A DNA stretch of 63,502 bases, the filler included, from Octopus bimaculoides (taxonomy: Eukaryota): NCBI RefSeq assembly GCF_001194135.2. It is 5 parts of 5 records of this genome, joined end to end, with 100 filler letters (N's around TTAATTAATTAA, not from the genome) between each part and the next. Parts side by side here need not be neighbours in the genome. Positions count along the whole stretch, not along the records: positions 1 to 13,108 come from NC_068996.1; 4 more parts are not named here. One strand, written 5' to 3'. Every line of letters starts with the position of its first letter. Positions within the stretch are counted from its first letter, which is position 1. Below the pieces are notes generated by a model. That model worked only from the letters and a program-made list of their open reading frames with translations, was not told the DNA's origin and searched no databases. Of the stretch, positions 1,510 to 19,605 are shown in pieces. Position numbers and translations under genes: made by a program.

Positions 1510-2250
1510 TGGTCTTGACAAGACAAATATGGAACGCTTCCCGATTTCGGGCAACAAAGTAGATACACCAAATATCCATACTTTTTATGTATGTATGTAG
1601 AATAGAAGAGCCAGGAGAAAACTTTCGGTTATCAAAGAATGGCTGCAGCGAACACTAGTCCCATGGTCTTTTAATGTAATTGAAGAGCCTTTAGCTCAAC
1701 CGGAAATAATCCTACCTCCACTCCATGTCAAACTTAGCGCTATGAAGCAGTTAGTTAAATCTCTTAATAAAGACTGACCATGCTTTCACTATATCTGCAG
1801 CTTATTTCCTGATCTCTATGCAGTTAAAATATAAAACCTGAAGTATTTTATAGGCTTCAGATCAGGAAATTGATGAAAGATGGGAAATTTGTAAATTCCA
1901 TAAATTCCATTGAAGCAGCAGCATAGAATTCATTTGTAATAGTTGTAAATGGCATTCTGGGCAACAAAAAGCAGCCAACTATGCCGAAATAGTTGACATT
2001 ATGATGGAGAACTTTCTAAATTTGGAAACGCATATGATCAGTCACCTTGATAAATTCCCTGAAAATCTTGGTTACTCAAATGACGAGCAGGGAAAACGTT
2101 TCCATCAGAACATAAAATCAATGGAACAAAGGTTTCAAAGCAGTTCAGACTTGCATATGATGGTAGACAGTTGCTGGAACTTGACTCATAATCTTCATGG
2201 GGTTCAACACTCAAGAAATTCATCCAAATGCTATTTCACGGGAAATTAGG
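1510..2250 (+). pseudogene. Decayed DNA-transposon transposase, probably Chapaev3-type (CMC)
   Basis: Pieced translation GQQSRYTKYP..FLC / IILPPLHVKL..MKQLVKSL / SHLDKFPENLG..DEQGKRFHQNIKSMEQRFQ..MMVDSCW matches a transposase family I recall as LPPLHIKLG..HLDFFPENLG..DEHGERFHQDI..YCW. Stops and frameshifts present. Superfamily name from memory. Confidence 0.7.
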
Positions 2251-3898
2251 CATAAATAATTATGTAATTTCTTTATAGAAATTTTAGAGTTTTTACTAGT
2301 TTTCAGTAGAATTTTATGAAGATATTCTGGTTTTGAAGAATGTATGTTATATCTTGTTCCCCATAAGCTGTTTTATTATTATTATTTTTTTAATGTAATT
2401 CTATGGATCCAGTGTCTTAACAACTTGATGTAATGGTAATGAATGGATGTAATTTTCAGAATGTTTGTGTCAAGAAAACCCTAATTTAGATCCAAATTTT
2501 TTGGCGAGACAAGAAATCCAACTTTAATAGGATGTGTTGTTTAGATCGTCTCAAATTGTACTTAGCGTTCAGAGTTAGCATCTCTCGTTGACGACACGTG
2601 CTATAGAAGCAGCGACTATATCAGCTGACAAAGTGATTGTCTGCAATGGTGGATGGCATTACCGTATAATATACCGCTGTTCCAGTATGTAACCGAGGCT
2701 GACTTAGTCTACTAAACTCAGCAAGGCGGTGCCTCGGTCTAATGCCTGACACCAATCGCAAATGAAAACAAAAGATACTAGAAACCCTACCCAAGTCTCC
2801 TCCAAATTTATGATGGAAGATTCTTCGTATCCGTAGATCAGGAGGAAGAACAGCAGACCGTCAAATGGCTATGTAAACTGATATTTGGCGTTGCAGGACT
2901 TTTGTTCCTGTTTGCACTAATTAGTTTTAGAGTGTGAGTCAGTTCGTACAATTCGGTTCCATTCTTTAGGCTTGGAGGTCAGATCTCAATAACTTAGACC
3001 GCTGCGGTAACGAGAGCAAACAATAGGTAAATTGCCCAACAGGGCTGAAGACATCCACCTATCCCAGAGTTAACGGAAAGTTGTCAAAGAAGGCACTGCA
3101 ACGCCTGAAGGACGCTACTCCTTGATTTGCAGTCGAAGTTGACTCTCCTAACATTTTCCTTTCCCAAGGAATTCACAAGGCAGTGAAAGTTTGTACTTGG
3201 AATATCTCCGATAACACGCTAAATAACTCCTAGTTGAGTCTCTGACATGAGCTACTTTTCCAGATCAGAGTACGTCCGGGAACTAATGGCTATAAGGTGG
3301 GTCCACACTCCTCAAAACTCGGAACATTCACATTAGGGCCTATTACTGGATGCAGTATTTTAAATTATATTTAGAAATATATGTGTGTATATATACCCCT
3401 ATATATAACTTTAATCTTAAGCATGATGTAATATTTATGAAGCAGCATCAAATAGCAAGAGAGTTTTAAAATACATACAAACAGGAAGAAAACAAACCGC
3501 TTATTACCTCTTTGTCATATGTAAGTATGTATATATTTATGTATGTATGTGTGTATGTAAGTCGTACTCAAAATCTGTTATTATGGACATTAATATAAAT
3601 GTTATCCAGTCGAGATATATAACATTTCTTTCCGTTTTATTAGGTATACAGCCATCATTAGATCTGGTATCGATTACAGATTAATCGATAATAAATCTCT
3701 TATCGATTATGCTATAATTTATATTATATAATCTATAATTTATATTGAGATAGCAAACTTGTAAGCAACATCCTGTGCAAATGATATTTAATAGAAATTT
3801 TATACATGTATTTATAACATATGTGGATGTACTGCTGCTAAATCGCTCGAGAGGAATATATAGAATATAAGCTGAATAATGCCTATGTCATACACTAG

Positions 3899-3900
<2 letters not shown>

Positions 3901-3931
<31 letters not shown>

Positions 3932-4206
3932 NNNNNNNNNNNNNNNNNNNNNNNNNNNNNNNNNNNNNNNNNNNNNNNNNNNNNNNNNNNNNNNNNNNNN
4001 NNNNNNNNNNNNNNNNNNNNNNNNNNNNNNNNNNNNNNNNNNNNNNNNNNNNNNNNNNNNNNNNNNNNNNNNNNNNNNNNNNNNNNNNNNNNNNNNNNNN
4101 NNNNNNNNNNNNNNNNNNNNNNNNNNNNNNNNNNNNNNNNNNNNNNNNNNNNNNNNNNNNNNNNNNNNNNNNNNNNNNNNNNNNNNNNNNNNNNNNNNNN
4201 NNNNNN

Positions 4207-4272
<66 letters not shown>
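3901..4272. repeat. (TA)n, assembly gap, (GA)n
   Basis: Direct. Confidence 0.95.
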
Positions 4273-4276
<4 letters not shown>

Positions 4277-5277
4277 CTAAAAAACCAATAAATTTTTTCA
4301 AAGCCAAGATATTTGACCCACCTCGGGAGAAGAATGGGTGAATGTATATTTCATAGCAGTGTCTAAAAACAGAAAAATTTCAGCAGGACAGCGTGGGTTA
4401 GCAAGAAATGCGTCTGAAGGAGCAGAAGAAATGGTCAGAAAGGTGAAGTGGTTAAAGAGGAGGCGCAGGATAACGAAATCCAGAAAGAGATTGGATAAAG
4501 TTTATTACTAGCCTAAGAGAAATAGTGTTTTCAGAAGAAAAAAAAACAAACAAAACAGCGGGGAAGTGATAGTACTAACTGCCAGTCTCGATGTAGCAGG
4601 TTAATAAGGAAACCGAAACAAGTCAATGGAGTAGCGGAAAAGTAAAAGAAGGTGAAATTACAAGAGAAATTACAGCCAGTAAATGAGAATCATAGCCAAT
4701 AATGCAGTCAAACTTAATAAGGACTTAATGTAATGAGTTAAAGCTTTGTAATATTCATGACGAGAGGCAAATTTTACATCAGAGAAATGATTTGATAAAG
4801 AAGTCTTATTGCGGTGCAATATAGTGATCTATTCTTGGTGGTATAATTTACAAACGTGACACTCTGCTGTGTAGAGGATTGCTCCACAAAGTATGCACCA
4901 TGACATATTAGGGTATACCCTCAGTATTTAGGTGATATATAAGGGTGGCAAGGGAGGAAAATAGTTTCATGGTCCTATTTGAGAGAGGATCTCAGGTGTG
5001 CAAATAGACATCGTTTAAAGGCAAGTGTACCTCCAGTGCCAAGGTAGATTTTACCATGGAGTGGGCGTAGATTTATAAGTGCACATTTATACACAGTATC
5101 ATAAAGCAAGAGATTGTTCTTCAGTGGATAATTTTTTAATACTCTACAATTGCAAGGTCTTTTTGTGGTCTACACTATAATTGGTCATATAGATAGAAGC
5201 AGGTAGGATAACATCGGTATTATCAAAATGCGGAGTGTTAGCGCATTTAGGATGAAGAAAGTATGTGTGCGTGTGTG

Positions 5278-5533: not shown

Positions 5534-5999
5534 CACACATANNNNNNNNNNNNNNNNNNNNNNNNNNNNNNNNNNNNNNNNNNNNNNNNNNNNNNNNNNN
5601 NNNNNNNNNNNNNNNNNNNNNNNNNNNNNNNNNNNNNNNNNNNNNNNNNNNNNNNNNNNNNNNNNNNNNNNNNNNNNNNNNNNNNNNNNNNNNNNNNNNN
5701 NNNNNNNNNNNNNNNNNNNNNNNNNNNNNNNNNNNNNNNNNNNNNNNNNNNNNNNNNNNNNNNNNNNNNNNNNNNNNNNNNNNNNNNNNNNNNNNNNNNN
5801 NNNNNNNNNNNNNNNNNNNNNNNNNNNNNNNNNNNNNNNNNNNNNNNNNNNNNNNNNNNNNNNNNNNNNNNNNNNNNNNNNNNNNNNNNNNNNNNNNNNN
5901 NNNNNNNNNNNNNNNNNNNNNNNNNNNNNNNNNNNNNNNNNNNNNNNNNNNNNNNNNNNNNNNNNNNNNNNNNNNNNNNNNTCTCTCTCTCTCTTTCTT

Positions 6000-6031
<32 letters not shown>

Positions 6032-6380
6032 ACTAAATCCTAAATCCGTGCAAAAGTTCTGCGAGTTAAAAAAAAGTGCTTCTGTGAATTGCTTTTGAGC
6101 GGATAAAGTTTTACACAACACTAAATGCAATTTTCAGTGTAATCAGCTATAAAACATATGCTGAGACGACCAGAAACCAACTACTTTTCGGTTTTAGTTA
6201 TACGAGTAATACTTTCTTGTACAAGGAAATTCTGTCGAGAACTTCCAGTTGTTCACATCCTAATCAATCAATAACTGGGACCTTAACAGGTGCAATTATC
6301 CCGGGTCAGAACAATCGTGGCTAAGAGGTGAGTCCACACTCCTGAATACCCTCTAATTCTCGTACCAGGATCCCATTAAC

Positions 6381-6487
6381 GAAGAAAAAGAAGAAGAAGA
6401 AGAAGAAGAAGAAGAAGAAGAAGAAGAAGAAGAAGAAGAAGAAGAAGAAGAAGAAGAAGAAGAAGAAGAAGAAGAAGAAGAAGAAGA
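6381..6487. repeat. (AAG)n microsatellite
   Basis: Direct. Confidence 0.98.
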
Positions 6488-6530
6488 GTTTCAAATTTTG
6501 CCAGAAGGACAGCAATTTGGGGGAGGAGAC

Positions 6531-6562
6531 TAATAATAATGATAATAATAATAATAATAATG

Positions 6563-6621
<59 letters not shown>
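6531..6621. repeat. (AAT)n microsatellite
   Basis: Direct. Confidence 0.98.
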
Positions 6622-7068
6622 TGAGAGTTGTGCGATAAGTATCGCCTGGAATGTTCCAATAAGTGGTATGAACACCAACCTTTGTCAGTGAAGGATCAGA
6701 TGTAATTCACATGGGATATGCCACTCTACATAGACAAGAAGTTGCAACTCTAAAGAACGGACCTTTATCGGCATAATTATACCTGCAGACCAAAATATTG
6801 TGAAGACAGAGGACGGCAAAGTCGGAAAGTACCAAGACCAAGCATTGGAAATGAAATGCATCCCTAGAACTTCAGGAATGGATGTGATATATATTGTGAC
6901 AGGCGGACTCCATAACATCTCAAAGCAATTTTCTGGCCTGCAAAGCTGCAAATACCAAACTTCATAGAAAGTACACAGTCAGCAGCAATACTCAGAGGAG
7001 CACCTGTTGAAGAAAATATTGCCTCTCTTAAAGAGCTGAGACGTGACATAGGTAACTCGGAACAAGAA
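6622..7068 (+). mobile_element. 5'-truncated R4/Dong-clade non-LTR retrotransposon 3' fragment A (RLE domain)
   Basis: ELCDKYRLECSNKWYEHQP..FTWDMPL..DQNIVKTEDGKVGKYQD.ALEMK..IVTG: C-terminal zinc-knuckle/PD-(D/E)xK region typical of R4/Dong/Rex6; disrupted; followed by (AAC)(AAT)n. Confidence 0.8.
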
Positions 7069-7070
7069 AT

Positions 7071-7094
7071 AACAACAACAACAACAACAACAAC

Positions 7095-7138
<44 letters not shown>
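7071..7138. repeat. (AAC)n(AAT)n microsatellite
   Basis: Direct. Confidence 0.98.
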
Positions 7139-7139
<1 letters not shown>

Positions 7140-7734
7140 TGAAATTGGCACAAAAGACGACATGACAATGTGGCACGAATGATCCATTGGGAGCTCCGTG
7201 AAAATCACGGCTACAAAGAGCAAAGACGTGGTATGAACAAACCCCAGAAGAAGTCATCGAGAATGAAGATTGCAAAATCCTGTGGCATTCAATGATTCAG
7301 TATGATCACCTGACCAGACATCGGAAAGCGAACATCGTTATGGTGAATAAAATCGAAATAACTTGCAAGGTAATCGACATAGCATGTCTCGGTAACAGTA
7401 GGATTAGAGAGAAAGAAGAAGAAAACTGAACAACTACGACGATTTGAAGTGGGAAATACGAAGGTTGTGGTTAATGAAGAGAGAAGACGTGATACCAATT
7501 GTAATTGGTGCACTTGGAAGTATCAGCAATCAACTACCAACATGGCTCAAAAAGATTGGTACAAATATAAAGACAGAACACCTACAAAAACCAGCATTGC
7601 TAGGAACTGCAACGCTTCTTCGCGGGGTCCTTGAAGCATGGCCAGTAAACAAGTGTCACCTTAGTCTGCTGGCTGAGGAGGGCTGACACTTTCCATCATA
7701 CCCAGCAAAATAAGCTGAGAGTTCTCATCAAAGG
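7139..7734 (+). mobile_element. 5'-truncated R4/Dong-clade non-LTR retrotransposon 3' fragment B (RLE domain plus 3'UTR)
   Basis: KRRHDNVARMIHWEL..KTWYEQTPEEVIENEDCKILW..KVIDIAC..YDDLKWEIRRLW..VIPIVIGALGSI..LQKPALLGTATLLRGVL; ends in ataatgataataataa. Confidence 0.9.
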
Positions 7735-7750
7735 ATAATGATAATAATAA

Positions 7751-7935
7751 GCCCTCTCTACTAAAGGCAGAAAGCCTGCAATTTGTTGGGGGAGTAGACT
7801 AGTCGGTTATATGGATCCCAGTGTTGAACTGGTACTTAATTTATCGACCCCGAAAGGATGAAAAGCAAAGCCGATCTCGGTGAGATTTGAACTCAGAATG
7901 TAGTGGGAGACGAAATACCGCTAAGCATTTCACCT
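7751..7935 (-). mobile_element. SINE working family C (5'-truncated)
   Basis: RC contains aaatgcttagcggtatttcgtct..ctgagttcaaat..tcatcctttcggggtcgataaattaagtaccag; same family as 41751-41970. Confidence 0.9.
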
Positions 7936-7960
7936 TGTGTGTTGTTAATGTTAATAATGC

Positions 7961-8012
<52 letters not shown>

Positions 8013-8013
<1 letters not shown>

Positions 8014-8575
8014 CCTGGATGCAGTACCAGGCAGTGGTTCTCATGGTTTCTGTCTTAATTGATTGGAAGTGTTATCATGTACATTGTTTTTTTCTTGGTG
8101 TATAAGATGGGCTACAACAAATATTCTGTTTAATACTACAGATTTGCTTGTCAGTTGCTTGACCTTAACCAGTTGAACATGTCCCTGAGTGGCTGACAAT
8201 ATGTGCATCTCTGATCATGAGCAGAAGTAGTGGGGGAGCATCATAGCTATGTGTTGAGAGGAATTCTTTAGAGTTTGGATAATTTACCTCTGAAAACATG
8301 GGTGTTTTGCTCAACATCCTTAAACAAACCTTATTCAGAGACCTTTTGAGCGGGATGGGCTACTCTACCTGAAGAAAATTCTAACTGGGCCCCATCTACA
8401 AGTTCATGCGCTGTTTATCTTGATATGAAATCCCCATGCTGCGCACATATGGTTGTAATGCATGTGTCTGGTGTACTCTTATCAGACGGGTAGACATGAT
8501 GGGTATAAATGGGTTTCGTATATTTTACCCCAGTATCACTTTGATGGCATGCACTGCTCTCTCACTCACTCACTC
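8013..8575 (+). mobile_element. ~560-bp non-coding interspersed element flanked by (AAT)n, full-length copy 1
   Basis: End-to-end reverse-complement match to 28808-29362; (AAT)n at about 7955-8012 and 8576-8643. Confidence 0.85.
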
Positions 8576-8646
<71 letters not shown>

Positions 8647-9625
8647 CATTTTAAGTCCTGCTGAAAAAGTATAGGAATAGTTATGATATAAAAAATATAA
8701 TAGGTATGGAAAACTCACAGTTTTGTCCAACCATTGTTAGGGTAGAGTATGGTTTAAAGTGTTTCTGGAAAAGAATTGAAAACAANNNNNNNNNNNNNNN
8801 NNNNNNNNNNNNNNNNNNNNNNNNNNNNNNNNNNNNNNNNNNNNNNNNNNNNNNNNNNNNNNNNNNNNNNNNNNNNNNNNNNNNNNNNNNNNNNNNNNNN
8901 NNNNNNNNNNNNNNNNNNNNNNNNNNNNNNNNNNNNNNNNNNNNNNNNNNNNNNNNNNNNNNNNNNNNNNNNNNNNNNNNNNNNNNNNNNNNNNNNNNNN
9001 NNNNNNNNNNNNNNNNNNNNNNNNNNNNNNNNNNNNNNNNNNNNNNNNNNNNNNNNNNNNNNNNNNNNNNNNNNNNNNNNNNNNNNNNNNNNNNNNNNNN
9101 NNNNNNNNNNNNNNNNNNNNNNNNNNNNNNNNNNNNNNNNNNNNNNNNNNNNNNNNNNNNNNNNNNNNNNNNNNNNNNNNNNNNNNNNNNNNNNNNNNNN
9201 NNNNNNNNNNNNNNNNNNNNNNNNNNNNNNNNNNNNNNNNNNNNNNNNNNNNNNNNNNNNNNNNNNNNNNNNNNNNNNNNNNNNNNNNNNNNNNNNNNNN
9301 NNNNNNNNNNNNNNNNNNNNNNNNNNNNNNNNNNNNNNNNNNNNNNNNNNNNNNNNNNNNNNNNNNNNNNNNNNNNNNNNNNNNNNNNNNNNNNNNNNNN
9401 NNNNNNNNNNNNNNNNNNNNNNNNNNNNNNNNNNNNNNNNNNNNNNNNNNNNNNNNNNNNNNNNNNNNNNNNNNNNNNNNNNNNNNNNNNNNNNNNNNNN
9501 NNNNNNNNNNNNNNNNNNNNNNNNNNNNNNNNNNNNNNNNNNNNNNNNNNNNNNNNNNNNNNNNNNNNNNNNNNNNNNNNNNNNNNNNNNNNNNNNNNNN
9601 NNNNNNNNNNNNNNNNNNNNNNNNN

Positions 9626-9660
9626 ATATATATATATATATATATATATGGAGAGAGGGA

Positions 9661-9704
<44 letters not shown>

Positions 9705-10225
9705 GATATACAAACATATATATACATCATATATATATATATATGTATCAATACACACACACATGTATAGATATGCACGCATATACATACCAATATATGT
9801 ACATAAATATATACATATTGTGTGTACATATATATATATGTGTATATGTGTGTGAGGGTGTATATATGTATGTATGTTTGTGCATATATATGTGAGTGTA
9901 TATATATATATATATATGTATGCATGTATATATATATATATATGTGTGAGTGAGTGAGCGAGCGAGCGTGTGTTTGGGTCTGTGTGTGCGTGTGTGTGTA
10001 TGTTTATGTATGCGTGTGTGTTCATTGCAATGCAATACTGAGGGGAATTCTTCAATGTTTGCTAACATAATGAGTTGCTGATATAATTGGATGTATACAG
10101 ATGTATGCATACCTCTGTCTGTATGTGTAAGCGACTCAGTGTATTCGTATTCCGAAGCGTATTATGCGGAATATTTCAATATACAGTCTAACACCCCCAC
10201 CCCCCACATCACCCCCACACACGTG

Positions 10226-10260
<35 letters not shown>
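9626..10260. repeat. Compound (TA)/(GA)/(TG) microsatellite block between gaps
   Basis: Direct. Confidence 0.9.
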
Positions 10261-10780
10261 NNNNNNNNNNNNNNNNNNNNNNNNNNNNNNNNNNNNNNNN
10301 NNNNNNNNNNNNNNNNNNNNNNNNNNNNNNNNNNNNNNNNNNNNNNNNNNNNNNNNNNNNNNNNNNNNNNNNNNNNNNNNNNNNNNNNNNNNNNNNNNNN
10401 NNNNNNNNNNNNNNNNNNNNNNNNNNNNNNNNNNNNNNNNNNNNNNNNNNNNNNNNNNNNNNNNNNNNNNNNNNNNNNNNNNNNNNNNNNNNNNNNNNNN
10501 NNNNNNNNNNNNNNNNNNNNNNNNNNNNNNNNNNNNNNNNNNNNNNNNNNNNNNNNNNNNNNNNNNNNNNNNNNNNNNNNNNNNNNNNNNNNNNNNNNNN
10601 NNNNNNNNNNNNNNNNNNNNNNNNNNNNNNNNNNNNNNNNNNNNNNNNNNNNNNNNNNNNNNNNNNNNNNNNNNNNNNNNNNNNNNNNNNNNNNNNNNNN
10701 NNNNNNNNNNNNNNNNNNNNNNNNNNNNNNNNNNNNNNNNNNNNNNNNNNNNNNNNNNNNNNNNNNNNNNNNNNNNNNNN

Positions 10781-10812
<32 letters not shown>

Positions 10813-11267
10813 GGAGAGAGAGAAGAGAAAGATTTTGTGTTTACGTATAAACAAATGTGTATGCGTATATCTATACACATATATACATACAGACGCATGT
10901 GTATATAAATATATATTTACGCGTGTCTGTACGTTTTGCTTGCGTATATGTATAATTCTATATAATTCTATACATATGCATATATATTTGTGAGTGCTCC
11001 TGCATACATACATACATACATACATACATATACGCATATATACAGGTATGCACACACATACATAACATTTGCGGTTTTTTGTTGTTTTTTCTTTTTATTT
11101 TCTCCTTTTCGGTGAGAAAAAAAACTAAAATGAATTAAGAATTTATTATATATGACATACAATTCATCACCTTTAACATAATTATCAAATATTCACATCA
11201 TACATAGCGTTTATATATTTTAATTTTTAATATGCAAATTTCTCTAGGTTTAAATTATTTATTATCT

Positions 11268-11429
11268 TTTACTTGTTTCAATCGGTGGACTTTGGTTTTA
11301 GCCGAACGAATCAATCGCCACTCCCCTCGGACATAATGATTCTTTTATAGAGCCGCTTGCTTATTCTGTCAATCTGTTTTGCCGAACGGTTAAATTATGG
11401 AGGCGTAAACAAACTAACACCAGTTTTCA

Positions 11430-11430
<1 letters not shown>
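11268..11430 (-). mobile_element. SINE family A tail, diverged
   Basis: tttacttgtttca..gccgaacg..ttaaattatgg..gtaaac..caccagttttcaa(ca)n. Confidence 0.65.
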
Positions 11431-11463
<33 letters not shown>

Positions 11464-11496
11464 ACACACACACACATATGCATGTACACAAATACT

Positions 11497-11880
11497 TACT
11501 CTTTTACTCTTTTACATGTTTCAGTCATTTGACTGCGGCCATGCTGGAGCACCACCTTTAGTCGAGCAAATCGACCCCAGAGCTTATTCTTTGTAAGCCT
11601 AGTACTTATTCTATCGGTCGCTTTTGCCGAACCGCTAAGTTACAGGGACGCAAACACACTAGCATCGGTTGTCAAGCGATGTTTGGGGGACAAACACAAA
11701 CATATACACACACACACATATATATATATATACATATATACGACGGGCTTCTTTCAGTTTCCGTCTACCAAATCCACTCACAAGGGTGTAGTCGGCCCTA
11801 GGCTATAGTAGAAAACACTTGCCCAAGGTTCCACGCAGTGGGACTGAACCCAGAACCATGTGATTGGTAAGCAAGCTATA
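11497..11880 (-). mobile_element. SINE family A, near full length
   Basis: tactcttttac..tttcagtcatttgactgcggccatgctggagcacc..gggcttctttcagtttccgtctaccaaatccactcacaag..cacttgcccaagg..gggactgaacc. Confidence 0.95.
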
Positions 11881-11947
11881 CGATGAGATCTTTTTTTTTA
11901 TGGTCCGCGCTATATAATAGAAGACACTTGCTCAAGATACTTTTATT

Positions 11948-12330
11948 GTTTTGCTTGTTTCAGTAATTTGACTCCGGCTATGCTGGAGCACCGCCTTTAA
12001 TCGAACAAATCGACACCAGGACTTATTCTTTGTAAGCTTAGTACTTGTTCTACTGTTCCCATTTTCCGAACCGCTAAGTTACGGGGACGTAAACACACCA
12101 ACATCGGTTGTCAAGCGATGGTAGGAGGTAGACAAACACAGACACACAAACATATACATACATTTATACGACGGGTTTCTTTCAGTTTCCGTCTACCTAA
12201 TCTACTCATAAAGTTTCGGTCGACCTGAAGCTATAGTTGAAGACACTTGCCCAAGGTGCCACGCAGTGGGATTGAACTCGGAATTATATGGTTGGGAAGT
12301 AAGCTTCTTACCACACAGCCACTCCTGCGC
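11948..12330 (-). mobile_element. SINE family A, full length
   Basis: Same motifs, ending in ..ccacacagccactcctgcgc. Confidence 0.95.
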
Positions 12331-12343
12331 TTGTATATATATA

Positions 12344-13108
12344 TCAGGTTTTGTCCAATTCTACCTTTTTTTTTTAATTGAAGGAAATTTAATTGTATTT
12401 TAGAATGTCTAATGGAATTCAAAATTATTTTTATGCATGTGTGTACATTTAAACTAATTAAATATTATTTTACAGATATAATAGAATTAAAATTTGGTTG
12501 ATTAAAATCATTTCTAACATCGAAGTATCCAAAGACCATTTAAAGCACATAATGCTTTATGAGTACAAAAAAGGAAACTCTGCAGCCGAAGTGACTCGAA
12601 ACATACACTCAGTTTATGGGAAAGAATGCTTGAATGAAAGAACTTGCAGAAGGTGGTTTGCAAAATTCTGAAATGGAGAGTTCAGGATGTCTAGTTGAGT
12701 TTGATGATAAGCTCCTTCAGGCATTACTTGAAGAAAATTCTGCATGAAGAGTTGACGAGTTGGCAATAAAGCTTAGTTCAAACCATACAACTGTTCATCG
12801 TCATCTTCAACAACTTGGAAAGGTTCCTAAACTTGGAAAATGGGTGCCTCATGAATTGTCCGAAAGCAACCGCAAATCCCGAGTTGACATCTGCTCTTCT
12901 CTCCATTCTTGTAAACTCATTTCACCCTTTTTGGATAGACTTGTGACTGGTGAGGAAAATTGGGTCGTCTATCGAAATGTTAAACGTCGTAAACAGTGGC
13001 TTGGTAAAAGGAAAAAAGCTCAACCACAACCAAGAAGGGAACTTCATGGGAAAAAGGTTCTTCTCACTATCTGGTGGGATTGCAAAGGAGTAATTCACTT
13101 TGAATTGT
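12344..13108 (+). mobile_element. Mariner (Tc1/mariner) transposon, 5' part with defective transposase, cut by a gap
   Basis: Translation from 12519: HIMLYEYKKGNSAAE..ERTCRRWFAKF*; WVPHEL at 12841-12858; VTGEENW (canonical VTGDEKW); KKVLLTIWWDCKGVIHFEL. Putative TIR start TCAGGTT after TA at 12342-12343. Confidence 0.92.
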
Positions 13109-13208
13109 NNNNNNNNNNNNNNNNNNNNNNNNNNNNNNNNNNNNNNNNNNNNTTAATTAATTAANNNNNNNNNNNNNNNNNNNNNNNNNNNNNNNNNNNN
13201 NNNNNNNN
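13109..13208. other. Assembly gap marker N44-TTAATTAATTAA-N44
   Basis: Exactly 100 bp; identical structure at 38073-38172, 42931-43030 and 61071-61170. Confidence 0.95.
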
Positions 13209-13542
13209 GTAGTGATGGTGGTGGCGGTGAGAGCGGCTGCGACAAATGTTGGCGTTGGCGTAAGTAAAGCTGGAAGTAATGGAGGTTACGACTGTGATGG
13301 TTCAAATGGGATTTACGGAATGCTGAAGAAAGCTGTGCAGTGTAGCTGTCGTTTTTGTGGAGTCGTGTTGCTAATCATAATTCTGATAGAGGAAGCAGAG
13401 CTTGAGCGGGGTAGGATTGTGATATTCGTCGTGTTATAGCGGTGGTTGTAGAGGTGACCTGTAGAATTGGTTAAGGTGGTTGATAAAAATTGATCTCAAA
13501 TTTTGGTACAAATCAGTAAGTTCGGGTGAATACTCATCCAGT

Positions 13543-13708
13543 GGAAACGCATGGCTTAGCGGTTCAGCTGTTGGACTCATGATCGTAAGATTGTGGTTTC
13601 GCTTCCGGACCGAATAACGCGTTGTGTTCTTCAGCAAAAACACTTTATACGACATGAAACCTGGAAACCGGTCGTTATGGATCGGTATGACTTGAGAAGG
13701 TAACTTTA
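13543..13708 (+). mobile_element. SINE working family B, internally deleted
   Basis: gcatggcttagcggtt..ttggactcatgatcgtaagattgtggtttcg..gttgtgttctt.agcaaaa..gaaaccgg..gagaaggtaacttta; compare 47727-47975. Confidence 0.8.
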
Positions 13709-13727
13709 ATTAAAAGGTAACTTAGTA

Positions 13728-13980
13728 CTCAACTGGTATTTATTTCATCGACCCAGAAAGGATGAGCGGCAAAGTCGACATCGATGGAATTTGAACTCAG
13801 AACGTAAAGACTGACGAAGAGGTAGTAGCAATATTGATGGGAATTTCCTGGGGGTGAGATGACTGAATCGTTAGCACGCCAGATAAAATGCTTATCGGCA
13901 TTTTGTCCGTCTTTACATCCTGAGTTCAGATGCCTTCGGGGCTTACTTTACCTTTCATTCTTTCGGAGTCGATGCAACAA
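13728..13980. mobile_element. Two SINE family C fragments (13728-13818 minus, about 13862-13980 plus)
   Basis: atcgaccc.gaaaggatg..aaagtcgac..gaatttgaactcagaacg on plus (RC of family C), then gaatcgttagcacgcc..ctgagttca. Confidence 0.75.
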
Positions 13981-14985
13981 AGACAGTGGAGAAGTCAGTG
14001 TTTCGGTGGTGCGTATATGAATTGAGCTGCTGCTACTGCAGGTGTTGATTCTGAGAACATTTGCACCAAGGCAAACTACATATTTGATAACTTTATCACT
14101 GATTGTACCTCACTATTACATTAAGATTACATGTATTTATTGAGGACACGGTATTTTATGCGCTAAGTCAATGAGCAAGCACTTCAGTTCATCGAAAAAC
14201 TGGAATGCTCATCAGCGAAAACGTCTGAATATAATTCTACAAAAAGATCTATTAGGAATGAGAGATGTGTATCTAGTTCTGTCAAACTGGAAAGGAAAAA
14301 AGAGAGACATTGATATAATAAAATAAACGGATAAATATCGTGTTACAGAAGCATATAGAATATAGAAATGTGAGTGTGTGAGTGTGATCATATATGTGTA
14401 TGTGTATGTGTATGTACACGTACTCATTTCGTGTGAATATCTTCTATCATATATATAATGCGTGCATGCATGCATTACATTTCCTACATATATTACTTGC
14501 ATACATACATACATACAAACATGCATGCATACATACATACACAAATACATACATATGGTTTAAATTTGCTGGAGGAACGATAAATTCAAGGAAGCTATAT
14601 GGATAGCAAAAAATCTAGAATAATGAAACAGAAAGCATACTGAACAAAAGAAAAACAAAACAATATCAAATTAATGGCACAGTCTTATGAAAAAAACCCA
14701 AAGAATATGACACAACAGAAAATCCCTACGCCCAGATCTGATAACAGGATATTGTTTCATGAATCTCACCTCTTATCGCCGAGGATTGATAATGCAATAT
14801 GGAAAGTGCATCAGAAATAACAATGGTGACTTAGGCAGGGCGAAATGTTTGCCAACCAAAATTTCTATTCGTATTCCTAAACATAACTAAAGCGATCGGC
14901 TTTAAAATAAAGCTCAAAAGTTAGCTGTAGAAACATAGGTTCAAAAATTAACAGAAGAGTCTGTTACATTCTTCTGTATTTTTAA

Positions 14986-15150
14986 TTTTAGGACAAGGCC
15001 AGCAGTTTGGTGGTAATTATTTCATCGACCGCGAAAGGATGATAAGCAGAGTCGACCCTGGTGACATTTGAACTCAGAACGGAGACATGTGTGAAATGCT
15101 TGCTAAGCATTTTATCCAGCGCAGTAACGGTTCTGACAGCTCATCGCCTT
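14986..15150 (-). mobile_element. SINE family C
   Basis: catcgaccgcgaaaggatga..gagtcgacc..atttgaactcagaacgg..gctaagcattt..cagctcatcgcctt. Confidence 0.85.
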
Positions 15151-15732
15151 CTGCCCTACTACCAGAACATTGTGAATACAATGTCGGTTGGGGGTTGCAC
15201 AAATTATTTTATAGAACTATTGGGAAACCAGTAATATCATAACATCTGTAAGGCAGCGAGCTTTCTGTTTTATGGTCAATGCGACGATCACACGCTACAT
15301 ACCTCCCTTCCAAGTACTGCTGTAAACAGCGGAAGTGAGCTAGAACGTTAAAACTTAGTGCGCAAAGATCAAGGTCAGTTTGTACCAAGCAACTCTACTC
15401 TGAGTGTTTTAGCTTCGTTACTATGGCAACGGTCTGCATACTTATTGATCAAACCTTGTAGGTATATGTACATATATAAACACATATACTTATGTAAGTA
15501 CAGGAGACCTTTTTATATACAGAAGCAAACACACCTGTTTTTATGTGCGTATGTGCCTTTGTATGTGTGTGTGTATGTGTGTGTGTGTGTGTGTGTGAAC
15601 GAGTGTGTGTTAGTGTGTGTACTCCAAAAATCCTATGTACAACATTTGGTATTATCTGCTTTCATGTTAAATAAAGAACAACATACGTAACAGACTGACA
15701 GTATACCAGCGGCTACTTATTGTGACGCATAG

Positions 15733-15797
<65 letters not shown>

Positions 15798-16099
15798 GAA
15801 AGAGACAGGGAGGTTGGAGAAGATAAGACAGATATATAAAGACAAAAAGTGCAAGAAAGTGTGTACAAGAAAAAATGGAAAGAAAGATAATATGGAAAGA
15901 AATTGGTGAGACGATTCTTAAATCAATAAGACATAATTTTTTTTACATAAATACCAATAAAACATTATCACTATATTACTCACTTCTTCTTCATGTCTTT
16001 CTCACTGTTCTTATATATCTGTGTATATATGTGTGTGTGTGTCTGTGTGTACATGTGCGCTCGCATCTGTGTCTGTATCAATGTATGTATATATATGAA

Positions 16100-16150
<51 letters not shown>

Positions 16151-16634
16151 TTTATTTAAACGTATGCATATGTATTTATATATGTGTATGTATGCTTGCG
16201 TTATATTATGTATATGTGTGTGGATTTGTGTGTGATTGTTTGTGTGTATGTGTGTGTGTAAGTGCGTGTCTCAGTGGTCTATATATGTATTTGCATAATA
16301 AGATTATCGTGATGTATTTTCAATAAAATGAAAAAGAACAACCGAAATCTGATAATATTTTAGTTGTAAGTAAACGCCTATGTAACATTCCTTATATCTA
16401 CAGAATTTCCAGCATATTCTTCTCATATGGAATATGTCTCTATTTGTCGTTAACTCTATCAAGTCTCGCTATTAAATCATCAGTACACTATTGGTGTCTA
16501 TAAAAAAAAAATCTGTCTTTGACAGAGGCGTCTTAGATCGAGTATACTACTTACTCGAAATTCTACGCTACAAGAAGAATATTCATAAGTATGTTCGCTA
16601 ACAGTACAAAGTGCGCGTTGTTCTGTGGACGAAG

Positions 16635-16870
16635 GTGAGTTCAGTGGAAGCGGATACATTTCAAACTACGCGTGCCTAATTTTGGCAGAGAGTGGCAGTG
16701 ATATTTTATGCATCCGGTAGCTTTGGCGAAGGAAACGTAGTGGTCGAGATCCAATGGATGGAAGCCAGACATTTTATTATTTGGTCAAGCCCTCATCAAC
16801 TTCTTCAAGGTTCACTTAAAAAGAAAAAAATGAAGTGCAGAGGAAAGTGTTGCCTCCCAGAAAATACACT
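16635..16870 (+). pseudogene. Highly decayed mariner transposase fragment
   Basis: VEADTFQTTR (compare mariner VEADPSQTTRELA) and downstream KKMK..GK..LPE resembling the region around WVPHEL; a related micro-fragment DELKTVVEADTYQTTPELAA lies at about 19117-19176. Confidence 0.5.
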
Positions 16871-17329
16871 GAAAGGTTAATGAGAATTCTAAACATGGTC
16901 CAAGTGAGCGGGTCAGCTCTGAGCATACGCCTGTAGATTAGGGGATCAAAGATGAGAAAATGCACTTGCTGTTATTGGGTAGAGTGAATATGGCTTTTTG
17001 GAGGGTTTTGACAAGTAGTTCTCGGAGATCTCCCCACCCTTGCAGAATTTTCTCGTAGATTGTATATTTCTATAATTTATTTTGTTTTATTATTTCTGTT
17101 ATTTTCCTTGTTTTTCCCCGTTATTTTTACAGTGTTATTCCACCCTGTATCGCTGTACAGTTTTCGATCCTTTTCTTACTCCCTGACAGATAAAAGTCTG
17201 ACTGCCGTTCTCGAAGTTACATAATTCTTATGCTCTCAACAACAACACATACACACACACACACATACAGATACAAACCGCTATGTATATACAAATGTTC
17301 TTATACAAGTATATATACACATATAAATA

Positions 17330-19212: not shown

Positions 19213-19605
19213 GAGGCAATATAAGGCTCTGGCTCTCATGGTTTCTGATCTTTAGAGATTGTAAGTGTTGTTATGCACTTGTTTTACTATCTTGATGTAA
19301 AAGATGAGGTACAGCAAATATTCGACTCAAGAGCATAGATTTCCTTGTCGCTTTGTTTCACCTTAATCAGTTGAGCATGTCCCTTAGTGGCTGTTGAGAT
19401 GCGCGTCCTTTTTTCACGAGCAGAAGTAGTGGGGTGGGGATCACAGCCATGTGTCGAGAGGAATTCTTTGGGGTGTGAATAACTCACCTCTGGTAACATG
19501 GGTGTTTCGCTCATCATCCTTAAACAACCCTTATTCAGGGACATTTTGAACGGAATGCGCTCCTCAACCTGATGAAAATTATAACTGGGCCCCATCTGCA
19601 AGGTC
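19213..19605 (+). mobile_element. Partial (5' ~390 bp) copy of the (AAT)n-associated element
   Basis: Aligns to about 8018-8405 (tggctctcatggtttctgatctt..gagcagaagtagtggg..catccttaaacaac..aactgggccccatct); preceded by (GAT)n. Confidence 0.85.

What the first reader, a model, noticed from the sequence alone, without database searches (positions are those of the whole stretch)
8013..8575. Discrete ~560-bp non-coding element that sits in (AAT)n with fixed polarity: candidate non-autonomous partner of a Dong-like retrotransposon
Seen: four copies. 8013-8575 and 28808-29362 share both ends precisely; 19213-19605 is the 5' part and 59248-59428 the 3' part. The three copies with an intact 3' end (..gcactgctctctcact.) all run into (AAT)n on the same strand as the R4 fragments, and the 19213 copy follows (GAT)n. 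There is no meaningful ORF, no TIR and no clear tRNA A/B box pair. Inference: a microsatellite-specific SINE-like or internally deleted (SIDE-like) element mobilised by an RLE retrotransposon. Its 3' end does not match the three R4 3'UTRs visible here, so the driver is not in this window. I cannot tell whether it is already in Repbase or Dfam.
Basis: partly seen in the sequence, partly recalled or inferred. Interest (0 to 1): 0.78.

Follow-up and report, generated by a model that had tools for sequence, protein, structure and literature searches.

The report
Octopus non-coding retroposon in AAT repeats
The 563-bp stretch is one copy of a roughly ten-thousand-copy, non-coding "hitch-hiker" retroposon of octopus genomes that ends in an (AAT)n tail and lands in (AAT)n microsatellites, probably copied by a Dong/R4-type LINE; it is an ordinary, if uncharacterised, repeat rather than a new kind of element.

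Summary
It runs 8013-8575 on the + strand, between (TAA)20 and (AAT)23.

- **Second copy.** A full-length copy in the Octopus bimaculoides chromosome assembly (L001 70548-71102) has the same two termini.
- **Abundance.** Raw DNA reads give about 9,000-22,000 copies. Only about 2,500-5,000 of them reach the 5' end, so most copies are truncated or diverged there.
- **Flanks across the family.** The 3' end runs into (ATA)n. The 5' end is preceded by A-rich, AAT-like sequence.
- **What it lacks.** There is no ORF over 67 aa, no TIR, no tRNA or Rfam match, no A/B box pair, and no compact HDV-like fold at the 5' end.
- **Setting.** It is the last unit of a same-strand train (6531-8644): two 5'-truncated R2-superfamily (restriction-like endonuclease, RLE) LINE 3' ends, a SINE, then this element, each separated by AAT-type repeats.

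Best reading: a LINE-dependent non-autonomous retroposon copied by target-primed reverse transcription in AAT arrays. A Dong/R4-like driver is plausible because it shares the target and the strand, but it is unproven. None of the three LINE 3'UTRs I could see resembles the element.

The AAT association is not special to this element. The genome's dominant SINE shows it too.

Verdict: a new member of a known kind, of modest interest.

The parts
8013..8575 (+). The element: one full-length copy, 563 bp and non-coding, 7.1% diverged from the family majority consensus.
   Evidence: Both termini are shared with L001 70548-71102. The consensus comes from read pile-ups.
8013..8090 (+). 5' unit ('head'), consensus GCCCTGATGCAGTACCAGGCAGTGGCTCTCATGG... 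It is the rarest part in DNA but over-represented in RNA-seq. It occurs duplicated in tandem in some transcripts.
   Evidence: DNA depth is 2,100-3,400 against 8,000-17,000 downstream. RNA depth is highest here, and 15-30% of RNA reads at 8090 jump back to 8009/8018.
8146..8260 (+). Best-conserved core of the family, with the highest read depth. It is probably shared by more diverged subfamilies.
   Evidence: Depth is 13,500-17,200 against about 8,000-10,000 on either side. Loose ends behind 8269 are a diverged version of the element's own sequence.
8557..8575 (+). Short (CTCA)n-like run at the 3' terminus, variable in length between copies.
   Evidence: The window copy has CTCTCACTCACTCACTC. 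The L001 copy is 8 nt shorter.
8576..8644 (+). (AAT)23: the element's 3' tail plus any remainder of the target array.
   Evidence: TRF. Family-wide loose ends behind 8568 read (ATA)n for about 7 units.
7952..8012 (+). (TAA)20 upstream flank: the landing site, which is itself the 3' tail of the preceding SINE.
   Evidence: The family-wide upstream consensus is A-rich/AAT-like.
7751..7951 (+). Copy of the genome's dominant SINE, same strand, ending in the (TAA)n above.
   Evidence: Summed depth is up to about 10-fold above that of the element. The sequence was read. The same SINE-tail then RLE-LINE arrangement occurs in L002.
7139..7750 (+). 5'-truncated RLE-type (R2-superfamily, Dong/R4-like) LINE 3' end: degenerate C-terminal endonuclease domain, about 95-nt 3'UTR and a short GAT/AAT tail.
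   Evidence: tblastn to P0027/P0036 at 7149-7632. Homologues carry RVT_1 and zf-RVT with this domain at the C-terminus. Their best solved-structure relatives are R2 proteins.
7071..7138 (+). (AAC)n(AAT)n between the two LINE fragments.
6622..7070 (+). A second, more degenerate 5'-truncated RLE-LINE 3' end, on the same strand.
   Evidence: tblastn hits at 6628-6937. Translation.
6531..6621 (+). (TAA)n at the head of the train, preceded by a 43-nt SINE head fragment (6488-6530) and (GAA)n.

Best explanation
The element is one copy of an octopus family of LINE-dependent, non-autonomous, non-LTR retroposons.

**Shown**
- Full length is about 560 bp and it is non-coding.
- There are roughly 10^4 copies, mostly 5'-truncated or diverged at the 5' end.
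- It has a defined 5' terminus and a 3' terminus of (CTCA)n followed by (AAT)n.

**Inferred mechanism**
- An RNA ending in (AAU)n is made by pol II or by read-through from host transcription units. Pol III is unlikely.
- A LINE-encoded enzyme nicks the TTA strand of an AAT microsatellite, and the (AAU)n tail pairs with the nicked strand.
- The RNA is then copied in place by target-primed reverse transcription, often incompletely.
- Each insertion brings a new AAT array, so later insertions stack head-to-tail in one orientation. This produces the train at 6531-8644.

**Most likely driver**
- An R2-superfamily (RLE) LINE of the Dong/R4 type. Its 5'-truncated copies occupy the same arrays on the same strand.

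Shown here are the anatomy, abundance, flanks, polarity, lack of coding capacity and co-location with RLE-LINE ends. Inferred are the transcription route, the priming step and the identity of the driver.
For: **Termini and flanks**
- Two independent full-length copies have identical termini.
- Family-wide, the 3' flank is (ATA)n: about 2,500 raw reads per run and contigs from three coded organisms.
- Family-wide, the 5' flank is A-rich/AAT-like with agreement of 0.5-0.68, well above what a random flank of this roughly 36% G+C genome would give (my estimate, about 0.3).

**Retroposon signatures**
- The 5' end is 3-8 times rarer than the rest. This is the usual signature of abortive reverse transcription.
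- No ORF exceeds 67 aa in any frame of the consensus.
- No TIR, no A/B box pair, and four TTTT runs are present.
- No tRNA or Rfam match.

**Link to RLE LINEs**
- There is a same-strand train of two RLE-LINE 3' ends, a SINE and this element, each separated by AAT-type repeats.
- The same arrangement, SINE tail then RLE-LINE fragment then (AAT)5, occurs at an unrelated locus (L002).
- The LINE fragments are the C-terminal domain of about 1,100-aa RT proteins without an AP endonuclease. Their closest solved relatives are R2 proteins.

**Literature**
- Dong elements target (TAA)n (PMC3812793).
- Dong-R4 LINEs are abundant and recently active in Octopus (PMC13282606, PMC9115989).
- Inferring a partner from a shared target has precedent in SINEU and Tx1-Mar (PMC4494074).
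Against: - There is no sequence similarity between the element's 3' end, or any other part, and the three RLE-LINE 3'UTRs available. A 'stringent' LINE-SINE pair would share that region.
- In the L001 copy the upstream AAT is only three units long. Insertion may therefore need very little AAT, and the long arrays may be mostly tails rather than targets.
- The upstream consensus is A-rich rather than clean in-phase AAT.
- The depth profile is not a monotonic 5' decline. The core is about twice as deep as the 3' end, so subfamily divergence contributes as well as truncation.
- RNA-seq shows both orientations equally and no discrete ends. There is thus no evidence for a dedicated transcript.
- Other octopus LINEs, such as RTE, also carry microsatellite 3' ends (PMC9115989) and were not examined.
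Confidence: 0.6

Rival explanations
1. It is a retroposon with an AAT tail but no real target specificity. An AP-endonuclease LINE with a microsatellite 3' end (RTE- or CR1-type) mobilises any RNA ending in (AAU)n. Upstream AAT then appears only because the tails of the hundreds of thousands of older SINEs and LINEs are the commonest sites offering microhomology.
For: - The L001 copy has only (AAT)3 upstream but (AAT)11 downstream.
- The upstream family consensus is A-rich rather than phased AAT.
- The dominant SINE shows the same association.
- The octopus RTE has a microsatellite 3'UTR (PMC9115989).
- No 3' similarity to RLE-LINE UTRs was found.
Against: - Every LINE end found in the same arrays in about 140 kb is RLE-type.
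- Dong-type elements are the documented (TAA)n specialists (PMC3812793).
- No RTE or CR1 end next to an AAT array was seen here, although I did not search for them with protein queries.
Confidence: 0.25
2. It is a SIDE-like or LP-SINE-like derivative of a Dong-type LINE: the LINE's own 5' end (promoter or self-cleaving ribozyme) fused to its 3' end by internal deletion. It would be co-transcribed through (TAA)n and trimmed to a precise 5' end.
For: - The 5' terminus sits precisely at the AAT junction in independent copies.
- Bombyx Dong has an HDV-like ribozyme that cuts exactly at the TAA/element junction (PMC3774820).
- Molluscan SINE-like elements with LINE-derived heads exist (PMC4758252).
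- The consensus RNA folds better than shuffles, z = -3.95.
- The head is over-represented in RNA.
Against: - No HDV or other ribozyme family appears in Rfam scans of two copies.
- A descriptor search found no compact nested double-pseudoknot starting at +1 that is shared by the consensus and both copies. Over the first 45 start positions, hit counts were not clearly above shuffles: 7.5% of shuffles did as well.
- The 3' end does not match three RLE-LINE UTRs.
Confidence: 0.12
3. It is not a separate element but the long 3'UTR of a LINE with heterogeneous 5' ends. Alternatively it is a solo LTR, a MITE or a Helitron derivative.
For: - The 5' end is several-fold rarer than the rest.
- If the preceding T is included, the unit reads TG...CA, as an LTR would.
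Against: - Two copies and the contig consensus stop at the same 5' base and are preceded by AAT-like sequence, not LINE sequence.
- The 3' flank is (ATA)n on one strand throughout the family, which neither an LTR nor a DNA transposon would show.
- There is no TIR.
- The ends are not TC...CTRR, as a Helitron's would be.
- No internal LTR-retrotransposon sequence appears among the best-supported loose ends.
Confidence: 0.03

Closest known systems
Dong / R4-clade RLE LINEs (Bombyx Dong, DongAg, DongBg; Dong-R4 families annotated in Octopus)
   Same: Sits in (TAA)n/(AAT)n in one orientation, ends in the same repeat, is found 5'-truncated, and occupies the same arrays as RLE-LINE ends here (PMC3812793, PMC13282606).
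   Different: Has no ORF and is only 560 bp long. It shows no sequence similarity to the three RLE-LINE 3' ends I could see, and no HDV-like 5' ribozyme was detected.
SINEU-3 with Tx1-Mar (crocodilians): a non-autonomous retroposon whose partner was inferred from a shared insertion target
   Same: The logic and the biology match: a short non-autonomous element and a target-specific LINE share a landing site, and tandem insertions are common (PMC4494074).
   Different: The target here is a microsatellite rather than a Mariner transposon. The head is not snRNA-derived, and the candidate partner is RLE-type rather than Tx1 (AP-endonuclease type). Target preference has not been quantified genome-wide here.
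LP-SINEs of gastropods and bivalves (LINE-promoter SINEs)
   Same: A molluscan SINE-like retroposon without a pol III head, with 3' terminal short tandem repeats, possibly transcribed by pol II (PMC4758252).
   Different: LP-SINE heads are demonstrably LINE-derived. The origin of this head is unknown, and LP-SINEs show variable target-site duplications rather than microsatellite embedding.
R2 SIDEs (short internally deleted elements of R2)
   Same: A non-coding parasite of an RLE LINE that inherits the LINE's target site (my own knowledge of Eickbush & Eickbush 2012).
   Different: SIDEs keep the parent's 5' ribozyme and 3'UTR. Neither could be shown here. The copy number here, about 10^4, is far above that of known SIDEs.
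Microsatellite-associated repeat families created by RTE LINEs in Lepidoptera
   Same: A retroelement 3' end that carries and spreads a microsatellite, giving many loci with the same flanking sequence (PMC2887409, listed).
   Different: Those families are LINE 3' ends. This element has its own defined 5' terminus and no LINE sequence.

Membership tests
SINE (strict sense) | Short, non-coding, high-copy interspersed repeat | tested here: met
   563 bp; longest consensus ORF 67 aa; about 9,000-22,000 copies from raw reads.
SINE (strict sense) | 5' head derived from tRNA, 7SL, 5S or snRNA, with an internal pol III promoter | tested here: not met
   ARAGORN finds none. There is no credible Rfam match in two copies at E up to 1 or 10. 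There is no A/B box pair with 2 or fewer mismatches at a sensible spacing, and there are four internal TTTT runs. Caveat: Rfam also missed the head of the neighbouring SINE, so sensitivity for decayed heads is low.
SINE (strict sense) | 3' region shared with a partner LINE, or a simple-repeat or A-rich tail | tested here: inconclusive
   The simple-repeat tail (AAT)n is present. No similarity to three RLE-LINE 3'UTRs was found. Other LINE families were not available.
SINE / LINE-dependent retroposon | 5'-truncated copies and a constant 3' end | tested here: met
   Depth is 2,100 on the first 30 nt against 7,700 at the 3' end and up to 17,000 in the core. The profile is not strictly monotonic.
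SINE / LINE-dependent retroposon | Target-site duplications | tested here: inconclusive
   Both flanks are the same trinucleotide repeat, so a duplication cannot be told from the repeat itself.
Target-specific element of (TAA)n (Dong-like behaviour) | The repeat on both sides of the insertion, in one orientation, in over 20% of copies (Kojima's criterion, PMC4494074) | tested here: inconclusive
   2 of 2 full-length copies have AAT-type sequence on both sides, though one has only 3 units upstream. The contig consensus upstream is A-rich/AAT-like, and the downstream consensus is (ATA)n on one strand. No per-copy count was possible.
SIDE-like derivative of an RLE LINE | 5' and 3' ends homologous to the parent LINE | tested here: inconclusive
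   The 3' end was compared with three RLE-LINE 3'UTRs and showed no similarity. The 5' end is not testable because no full-length octopus Dong could be fetched.
SIDE-like derivative of an RLE LINE | HDV-like self-cleaving ribozyme at the 5' junction | tested here: not met
   There is no HDV-family Rfam match. No compact P1-P2-P3-P1'-P4-P2' solution starting at +1 is shared by the consensus and both copies. The descriptor is crude, so an atypical ribozyme is not excluded.
LP-SINE (LINE-promoter SINE) | Head homologous to a LINE 5' segment | not testable with these tools
   No LINE 5' ends from this genome are in hand.
Solo LTR | TG...CA ends, 4-6 bp target duplication, some copies flanking an internal region, no strand bias relative to the flank | tested here: not met
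   TG...CA is obtained only by borrowing the flanking T. The 3' flank is (ATA)n on one strand family-wide. No internal-region junction appears among the best-supported loose ends.
MITE / TIR transposon | Terminal inverted repeats | tested here: not met
   6 of 20 terminal bases match. No inverted repeat was reported at the ends.
Helitron derivative | 5' TC, 3' CTRR with a sub-terminal hairpin, insertion between A and T | tested here: not met
   The ends are GCCC... and ...CTCACTCA.
R2-superfamily (RLE) LINE, applied to the neighbouring fragments 6622-7070 and 7139-7750 | RT followed by a zinc knuckle and a C-terminal PD-(D/E)XK endonuclease, with no N-terminal AP endonuclease | tested here: met
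   The fragments align to the last about 150 residues of 1,100-1,300-aa proteins. Those proteins carry RVT_1 and zf-RVT and no Exo_endo_phos domain. Their best solved relatives are R2 proteins at E = 6e-31. Placement in the R4/Dong clade specifically was not tested by phylogeny.

The most novel reading that the evidence does not exclude
The AAT-tailed retroposons of octopus may all be driven by AAT-microsatellite-targeting RLE (Dong/R4-type) LINEs. That would cover this promoter-less 560-bp family and also the dominant SINE (contig depth about ten times this element's; an absolute count was not established). The AAT array would serve as landing pad, as primer-annealing site and, through read-through transcription, as part of the expression strategy. 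This would be a genome-scale SINE expansion driven by an R2-superfamily enzyme. To my knowledge that is not an established LINE-SINE partnership.
Probability: 0.2. Interest if true: 0.6.

Novelty: new member of a known kind. Interest (0 to 1): 0.3.

Why it matters
If the Dong/R4 link holds, this family and the neighbouring SINEs would show that a restriction-like-endonuclease LINE can sustain large non-autonomous families. They would also show that trinucleotide microsatellites in octopus are largely made, and then re-used, by retroposons.

That bears on three things:
- why octopus genomes are so repeat-rich;
- why molluscan microsatellite markers share flanking sequence;
- how target-specific LINEs choose their templates.

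In practice the family also pollutes annotation. One copy is read through as 60 residues of a PP2A-B55 gene model. On present evidence, however, it is one more uncharacterised interspersed repeat.

Tried and rejected
1. **Other copies in the piece.** None were found.
2. **Protein-database search with the degenerate RLE fragment**, to reach octopus Dong genes. No hit.
   - The exhaustive representative search found thousands of relatives, but at 60% identity or less, none clearly octopus, and not usable for locus look-up.
3. **Six-frame 'pseudo-protein' queries** from the element and the SINEs, to fish out octopus gene models containing exonised copies.
   - This worked twice (P0001 gave L001, P0154 gave L002).
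   - Most hits were UniRef-only and had no locus on record.
4. **Supplement searches.**
   - The O. vulgaris transcriptome held with PMC9115989 was searched for six element k-mers, with no hit in the stored 400 kb.
   - The supplement of PMC13282606 holds no library.
5. **Rfam scans.** Permissive thresholds on two copies gave only low-complexity or chance hits.
6. **HDV-like descriptor search.** Hits were no better than shuffles, and no solution was shared between copies.
7. **Contig-depth copy number.** The figure of 3x10^4-10^5 was rejected in favour of raw-read depth, because summed contig word-depths overcount.
8. **'Skip 561' joints** (8013 to 8575). These were rejected as empty-site evidence, because their depth shows they are other AAT loci.
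9. **Orthologous empty site for this copy.** Contigs of the other species break inside the AAT array.

Full report
**What is in the sequence.** Positions 8013-8575 (+) are a 563-bp unit lying between (TAA)20 (7952-8012) and a perfect (AAT)23 (8576-8644). The piece contains no second copy and nothing similar to it, including the LINE fragments and SINEs nearby.

**Which organism.** I translated the element's frames and searched them as pseudo-proteins. The only hits were Octopus bimaculoides gene models that had swallowed pieces of the element. One of them gave an 85.7-kb locus of the O. bimaculoides chromosome assembly (L001, GCA_001194135.2 CM046622.1). The window is therefore O. bimaculoides or a very close relative. 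Sequencing runs of at least six coded organisms hold the element, so the family is shared by several species.

**Are the ends real?** Yes.
- L001 70548-71102 is a second full-length copy. It begins GCCCTGATGCAG... and ends ...GCACTGCTCTCTCACTCA, at exactly the bases where the window copy begins and ends.
- Upstream of it is aaataataatat, and downstream is (AAT)11.
- Contigs from two runs of one organism, laid on the 5' end, all lose similarity at the same place. Their overhang consensus is A-rich/AAT-like followed by TGCCCT.
- At the 3' end about 2,500 raw reads per run, plus contigs from other species, continue as ATAATAAT... for about seven units.
- The 3' terminus carries a short (CTCA)n of variable length.

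**Copy number and shape of the family.** Summed contig depth suggested 3x10^4-10^5 copies, but that measure overcounts. Raw genomic reads, sampled at about 0.7x genome coverage, give the depths below.

| Region | Depth |
|---|---|
| First 30 nt | about 2,100 |
| 8055-8084 | about 3,400 |
| 8146-8240 (core) | 14,000-17,000 |
| 8355-8487 | about 10,000 |
| 3' end | about 7,700 |

- This corresponds to roughly 9,000-22,000 copies, of which 2,500-5,000 reach the 5' end.
- Full-length 560-bp copies are thus a minority.
- The remainder are 5'-truncated or belong to diverged subfamilies that keep only the core. Loose ends behind 8269 are a diverged version of the element itself.
- The window copy differs from the majority consensus at 7.1% of sites, 80% of them transitions. 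The L001 copy differs at 9.6%.
- On the scale quoted for octopus repeats (JC 0.065 is about 18 My and 0.09 about 25 My; PMC13282606), this places them at roughly 20-28 My.

**What it is not.**
- The consensus has no ORF over 67 aa in any frame.
- It has no terminal inverted repeat, no A/B box pair, and four TTTT runs that would stop pol III.
- ARAGORN and permissive Rfam scans of two copies find nothing credible.
- Bombyx Dong carries an HDV-like ribozyme that cuts exactly at its TAA junction (PMC3774820), so I looked for the nested double-pseudoknot at the 5' end.
- There was no compact solution starting at +1 that the consensus and both copies share. Over the wider set of start positions, the number of hits was matched by 7.5% of shuffles.
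- The consensus RNA does fold better than shuffles (z = -3.95), which is suggestive but not specific.

**The neighbourhood.**
- 6622-7070 and 7139-7750 are two 5'-truncated 3' ends of a LINE, on the same strand.
- They align to the extreme C-terminus of 1,100-1,300-aa proteins that carry RVT_1 and a zinc knuckle but no AP endonuclease.
- The best solved relatives of those proteins are R2 proteins. The fragments are therefore restriction-like-endonuclease LINEs, the superfamily that holds R4 and Dong. I did not test clade placement by phylogeny.
- Each fragment is preceded and followed by AAT-type repeat. A copy of the genome's dominant SINE follows (7751-7951) and ends in the (TAA)20 in which the element sits.
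- The region 6531-8644 is thus a head-to-tail train of four retroposon units in one orientation, separated by AAT-type arrays.
- An unrelated locus shows the same grammar: SINE tail, then RLE-LINE fragment, then (AAT)5 (L002).
- The dominant SINE's head is also what most often follows AAT arrays in RNA reads, accounting for about a fifth of the overhangs behind 8645. The same is seen in L001.
- The AAT association is therefore general in this genome, not particular to the 560-bp family.

**Expression.**
- In three RNA-seq runs the family is covered on both orientations equally, and no position shows many fragments starting or ending.
- The unique flank has no coverage at all, so this looks like passive transcription within other units.
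- Two oddities stand out. The first about 90 nt are strongly over-represented in RNA relative to DNA.
- In addition, 15-30% of RNA reads at 8090 jump back to 8009/8018, against about 1% of DNA reads. This suggests a few strongly expressed loci with a duplicated 5' unit.

**Mechanism.** The best-supported account is a LINE-dependent non-autonomous retroposon. Its (AAU)n-tailed RNA is copied by target-primed reverse transcription at a nick in an AAT array, often incompletely. Each insertion adds a fresh array that invites the next.
- Shown: anatomy, abundance, polarity, flanks, lack of coding capacity and co-location with RLE-LINE ends.
- Inferred: the route of transcription, the priming step and the driver.
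- The case for a Dong/R4-like driver rests on shared target and strand. This is the same logic used for SINEU and Tx1-Mar (PMC4494074), supported by the documented (TAA)n specificity of Dong (PMC3812793) and the abundance of Dong-R4 in Octopus (PMC13282606).
- Against it, the element matches none of the three RLE-LINE 3'UTRs available. I could not obtain a full-length octopus Dong to compare 5' ends.
- The main rival is an AAT-tailed element moved by another LINE type without true target specificity. It is favoured by the very short upstream AAT in L001.

**Comparison and verdict.**
- It behaves like target-sharing non-autonomous partners (SINEU-3), like molluscan LP-SINEs that lack a pol III head (PMC4758252), and conceptually like R2 SIDEs.
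- It fails the strict SINE definition because it has no pol III head. Membership of the SIDE or LP-SINE groups could not be established.
- A family of this size is very likely already present, unnamed, in octopus repeat libraries, but I could not query Dfam or Repbase.
- I rate it a new member of a known kind, with interest 0.3.

Noticed in passing
window 6531-8644: Head-to-tail 'train' of four retroposon units on one strand: RLE-LINE end, RLE-LINE end, SINE, then the 560-bp element. Each is separated by an AAT-type microsatellite. The same grammar occurs at L002 5780-6380.
   Followed up: yes
window 7751-7951 and 6488-6530; L001 about 45900 (- strand): The dominant SINE ends in (AAT)n. Its head (GTTTCAAATTTTGGCACAAGGCCAGCAATTTGGGGGAGG...) very often directly follows AAT, GAT or GAA repeats. 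About a fifth of RNA-read overhangs behind 8645 are this head.
   Followed up: partly
window 8013-8090: 15-30% of RNA reads reaching 8090 jump back to 8009/8018, giving a tandem copy of the 78-nt 5' unit. Only about 1% of DNA reads do so. The head is also strongly over-represented in RNA relative to DNA. One or a few highly expressed loci, or some RNA-level process, could explain this, but it remains unexplained.
   Followed up: partly
window about 8037 onward (seen in RNA runs X41 and X43): An abundant RNA form joins a SINE tail (...GCCTT + AATAATAA) to a 5'-truncated element that starts at GCTCTCATGG. This may be a composite subfamily or a single expressed locus.
   Followed up: no
L001 70970-71488: The L001 copy is exonised in the annotated PP2A B55-alpha gene model (P0001 residues 92-151). 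The reading frame runs from the element's last about 130 nt, through (AAT)n read as poly-Asn, into the true exon. This is probably an annotation artefact.
   Followed up: partly
window 12498-13108: Mariner-type transposase remnant, with HTH_48 at E = 1e-20 and Transposase_1 at E = 2e-15. It is frame-shifted and cut off by the edge of the piece.
   Followed up: yes
window 11501-12305 and 1128-1468: Two tandem copies (82-85% alike, period about 430-440) and a third copy of another abundant SINE-like repeat (TTTCAGTCATTTGACTGCGGCCATGCTGGAGCACC...), each with an internal AC/AT dinucleotide run.
   Followed up: no
window 6040-6487 and 3287-3318: The sequence ending ...GTGAGTCCACACTCCTGAATACC... runs into (GAA)35, and a 32-nt stretch of it recurs at 3287-3318 (84%). 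This may be another microsatellite-tailed repeat family.
   Followed up: no
window 2001-2249: An 82-aa ORF (…FPENLGYSNDEQGKRFHQNIKSMEQRFQ…) that from memory looks like a transposase-derived C-terminus. It has no Pfam hit at E up to 0.01.
   Followed up: partly
window 3932-4206, 5542-5981, 8786-9625, 10261-10780: Four assembly gaps (runs of N); three of them directly abut di-nucleotide microsatellites (TA, GA, AC, TC). The assembly breaks at simple repeats, and the large 'inverted repeats' and 'ORFs' reported across them are artefacts of the N runs.
   Followed up: yes
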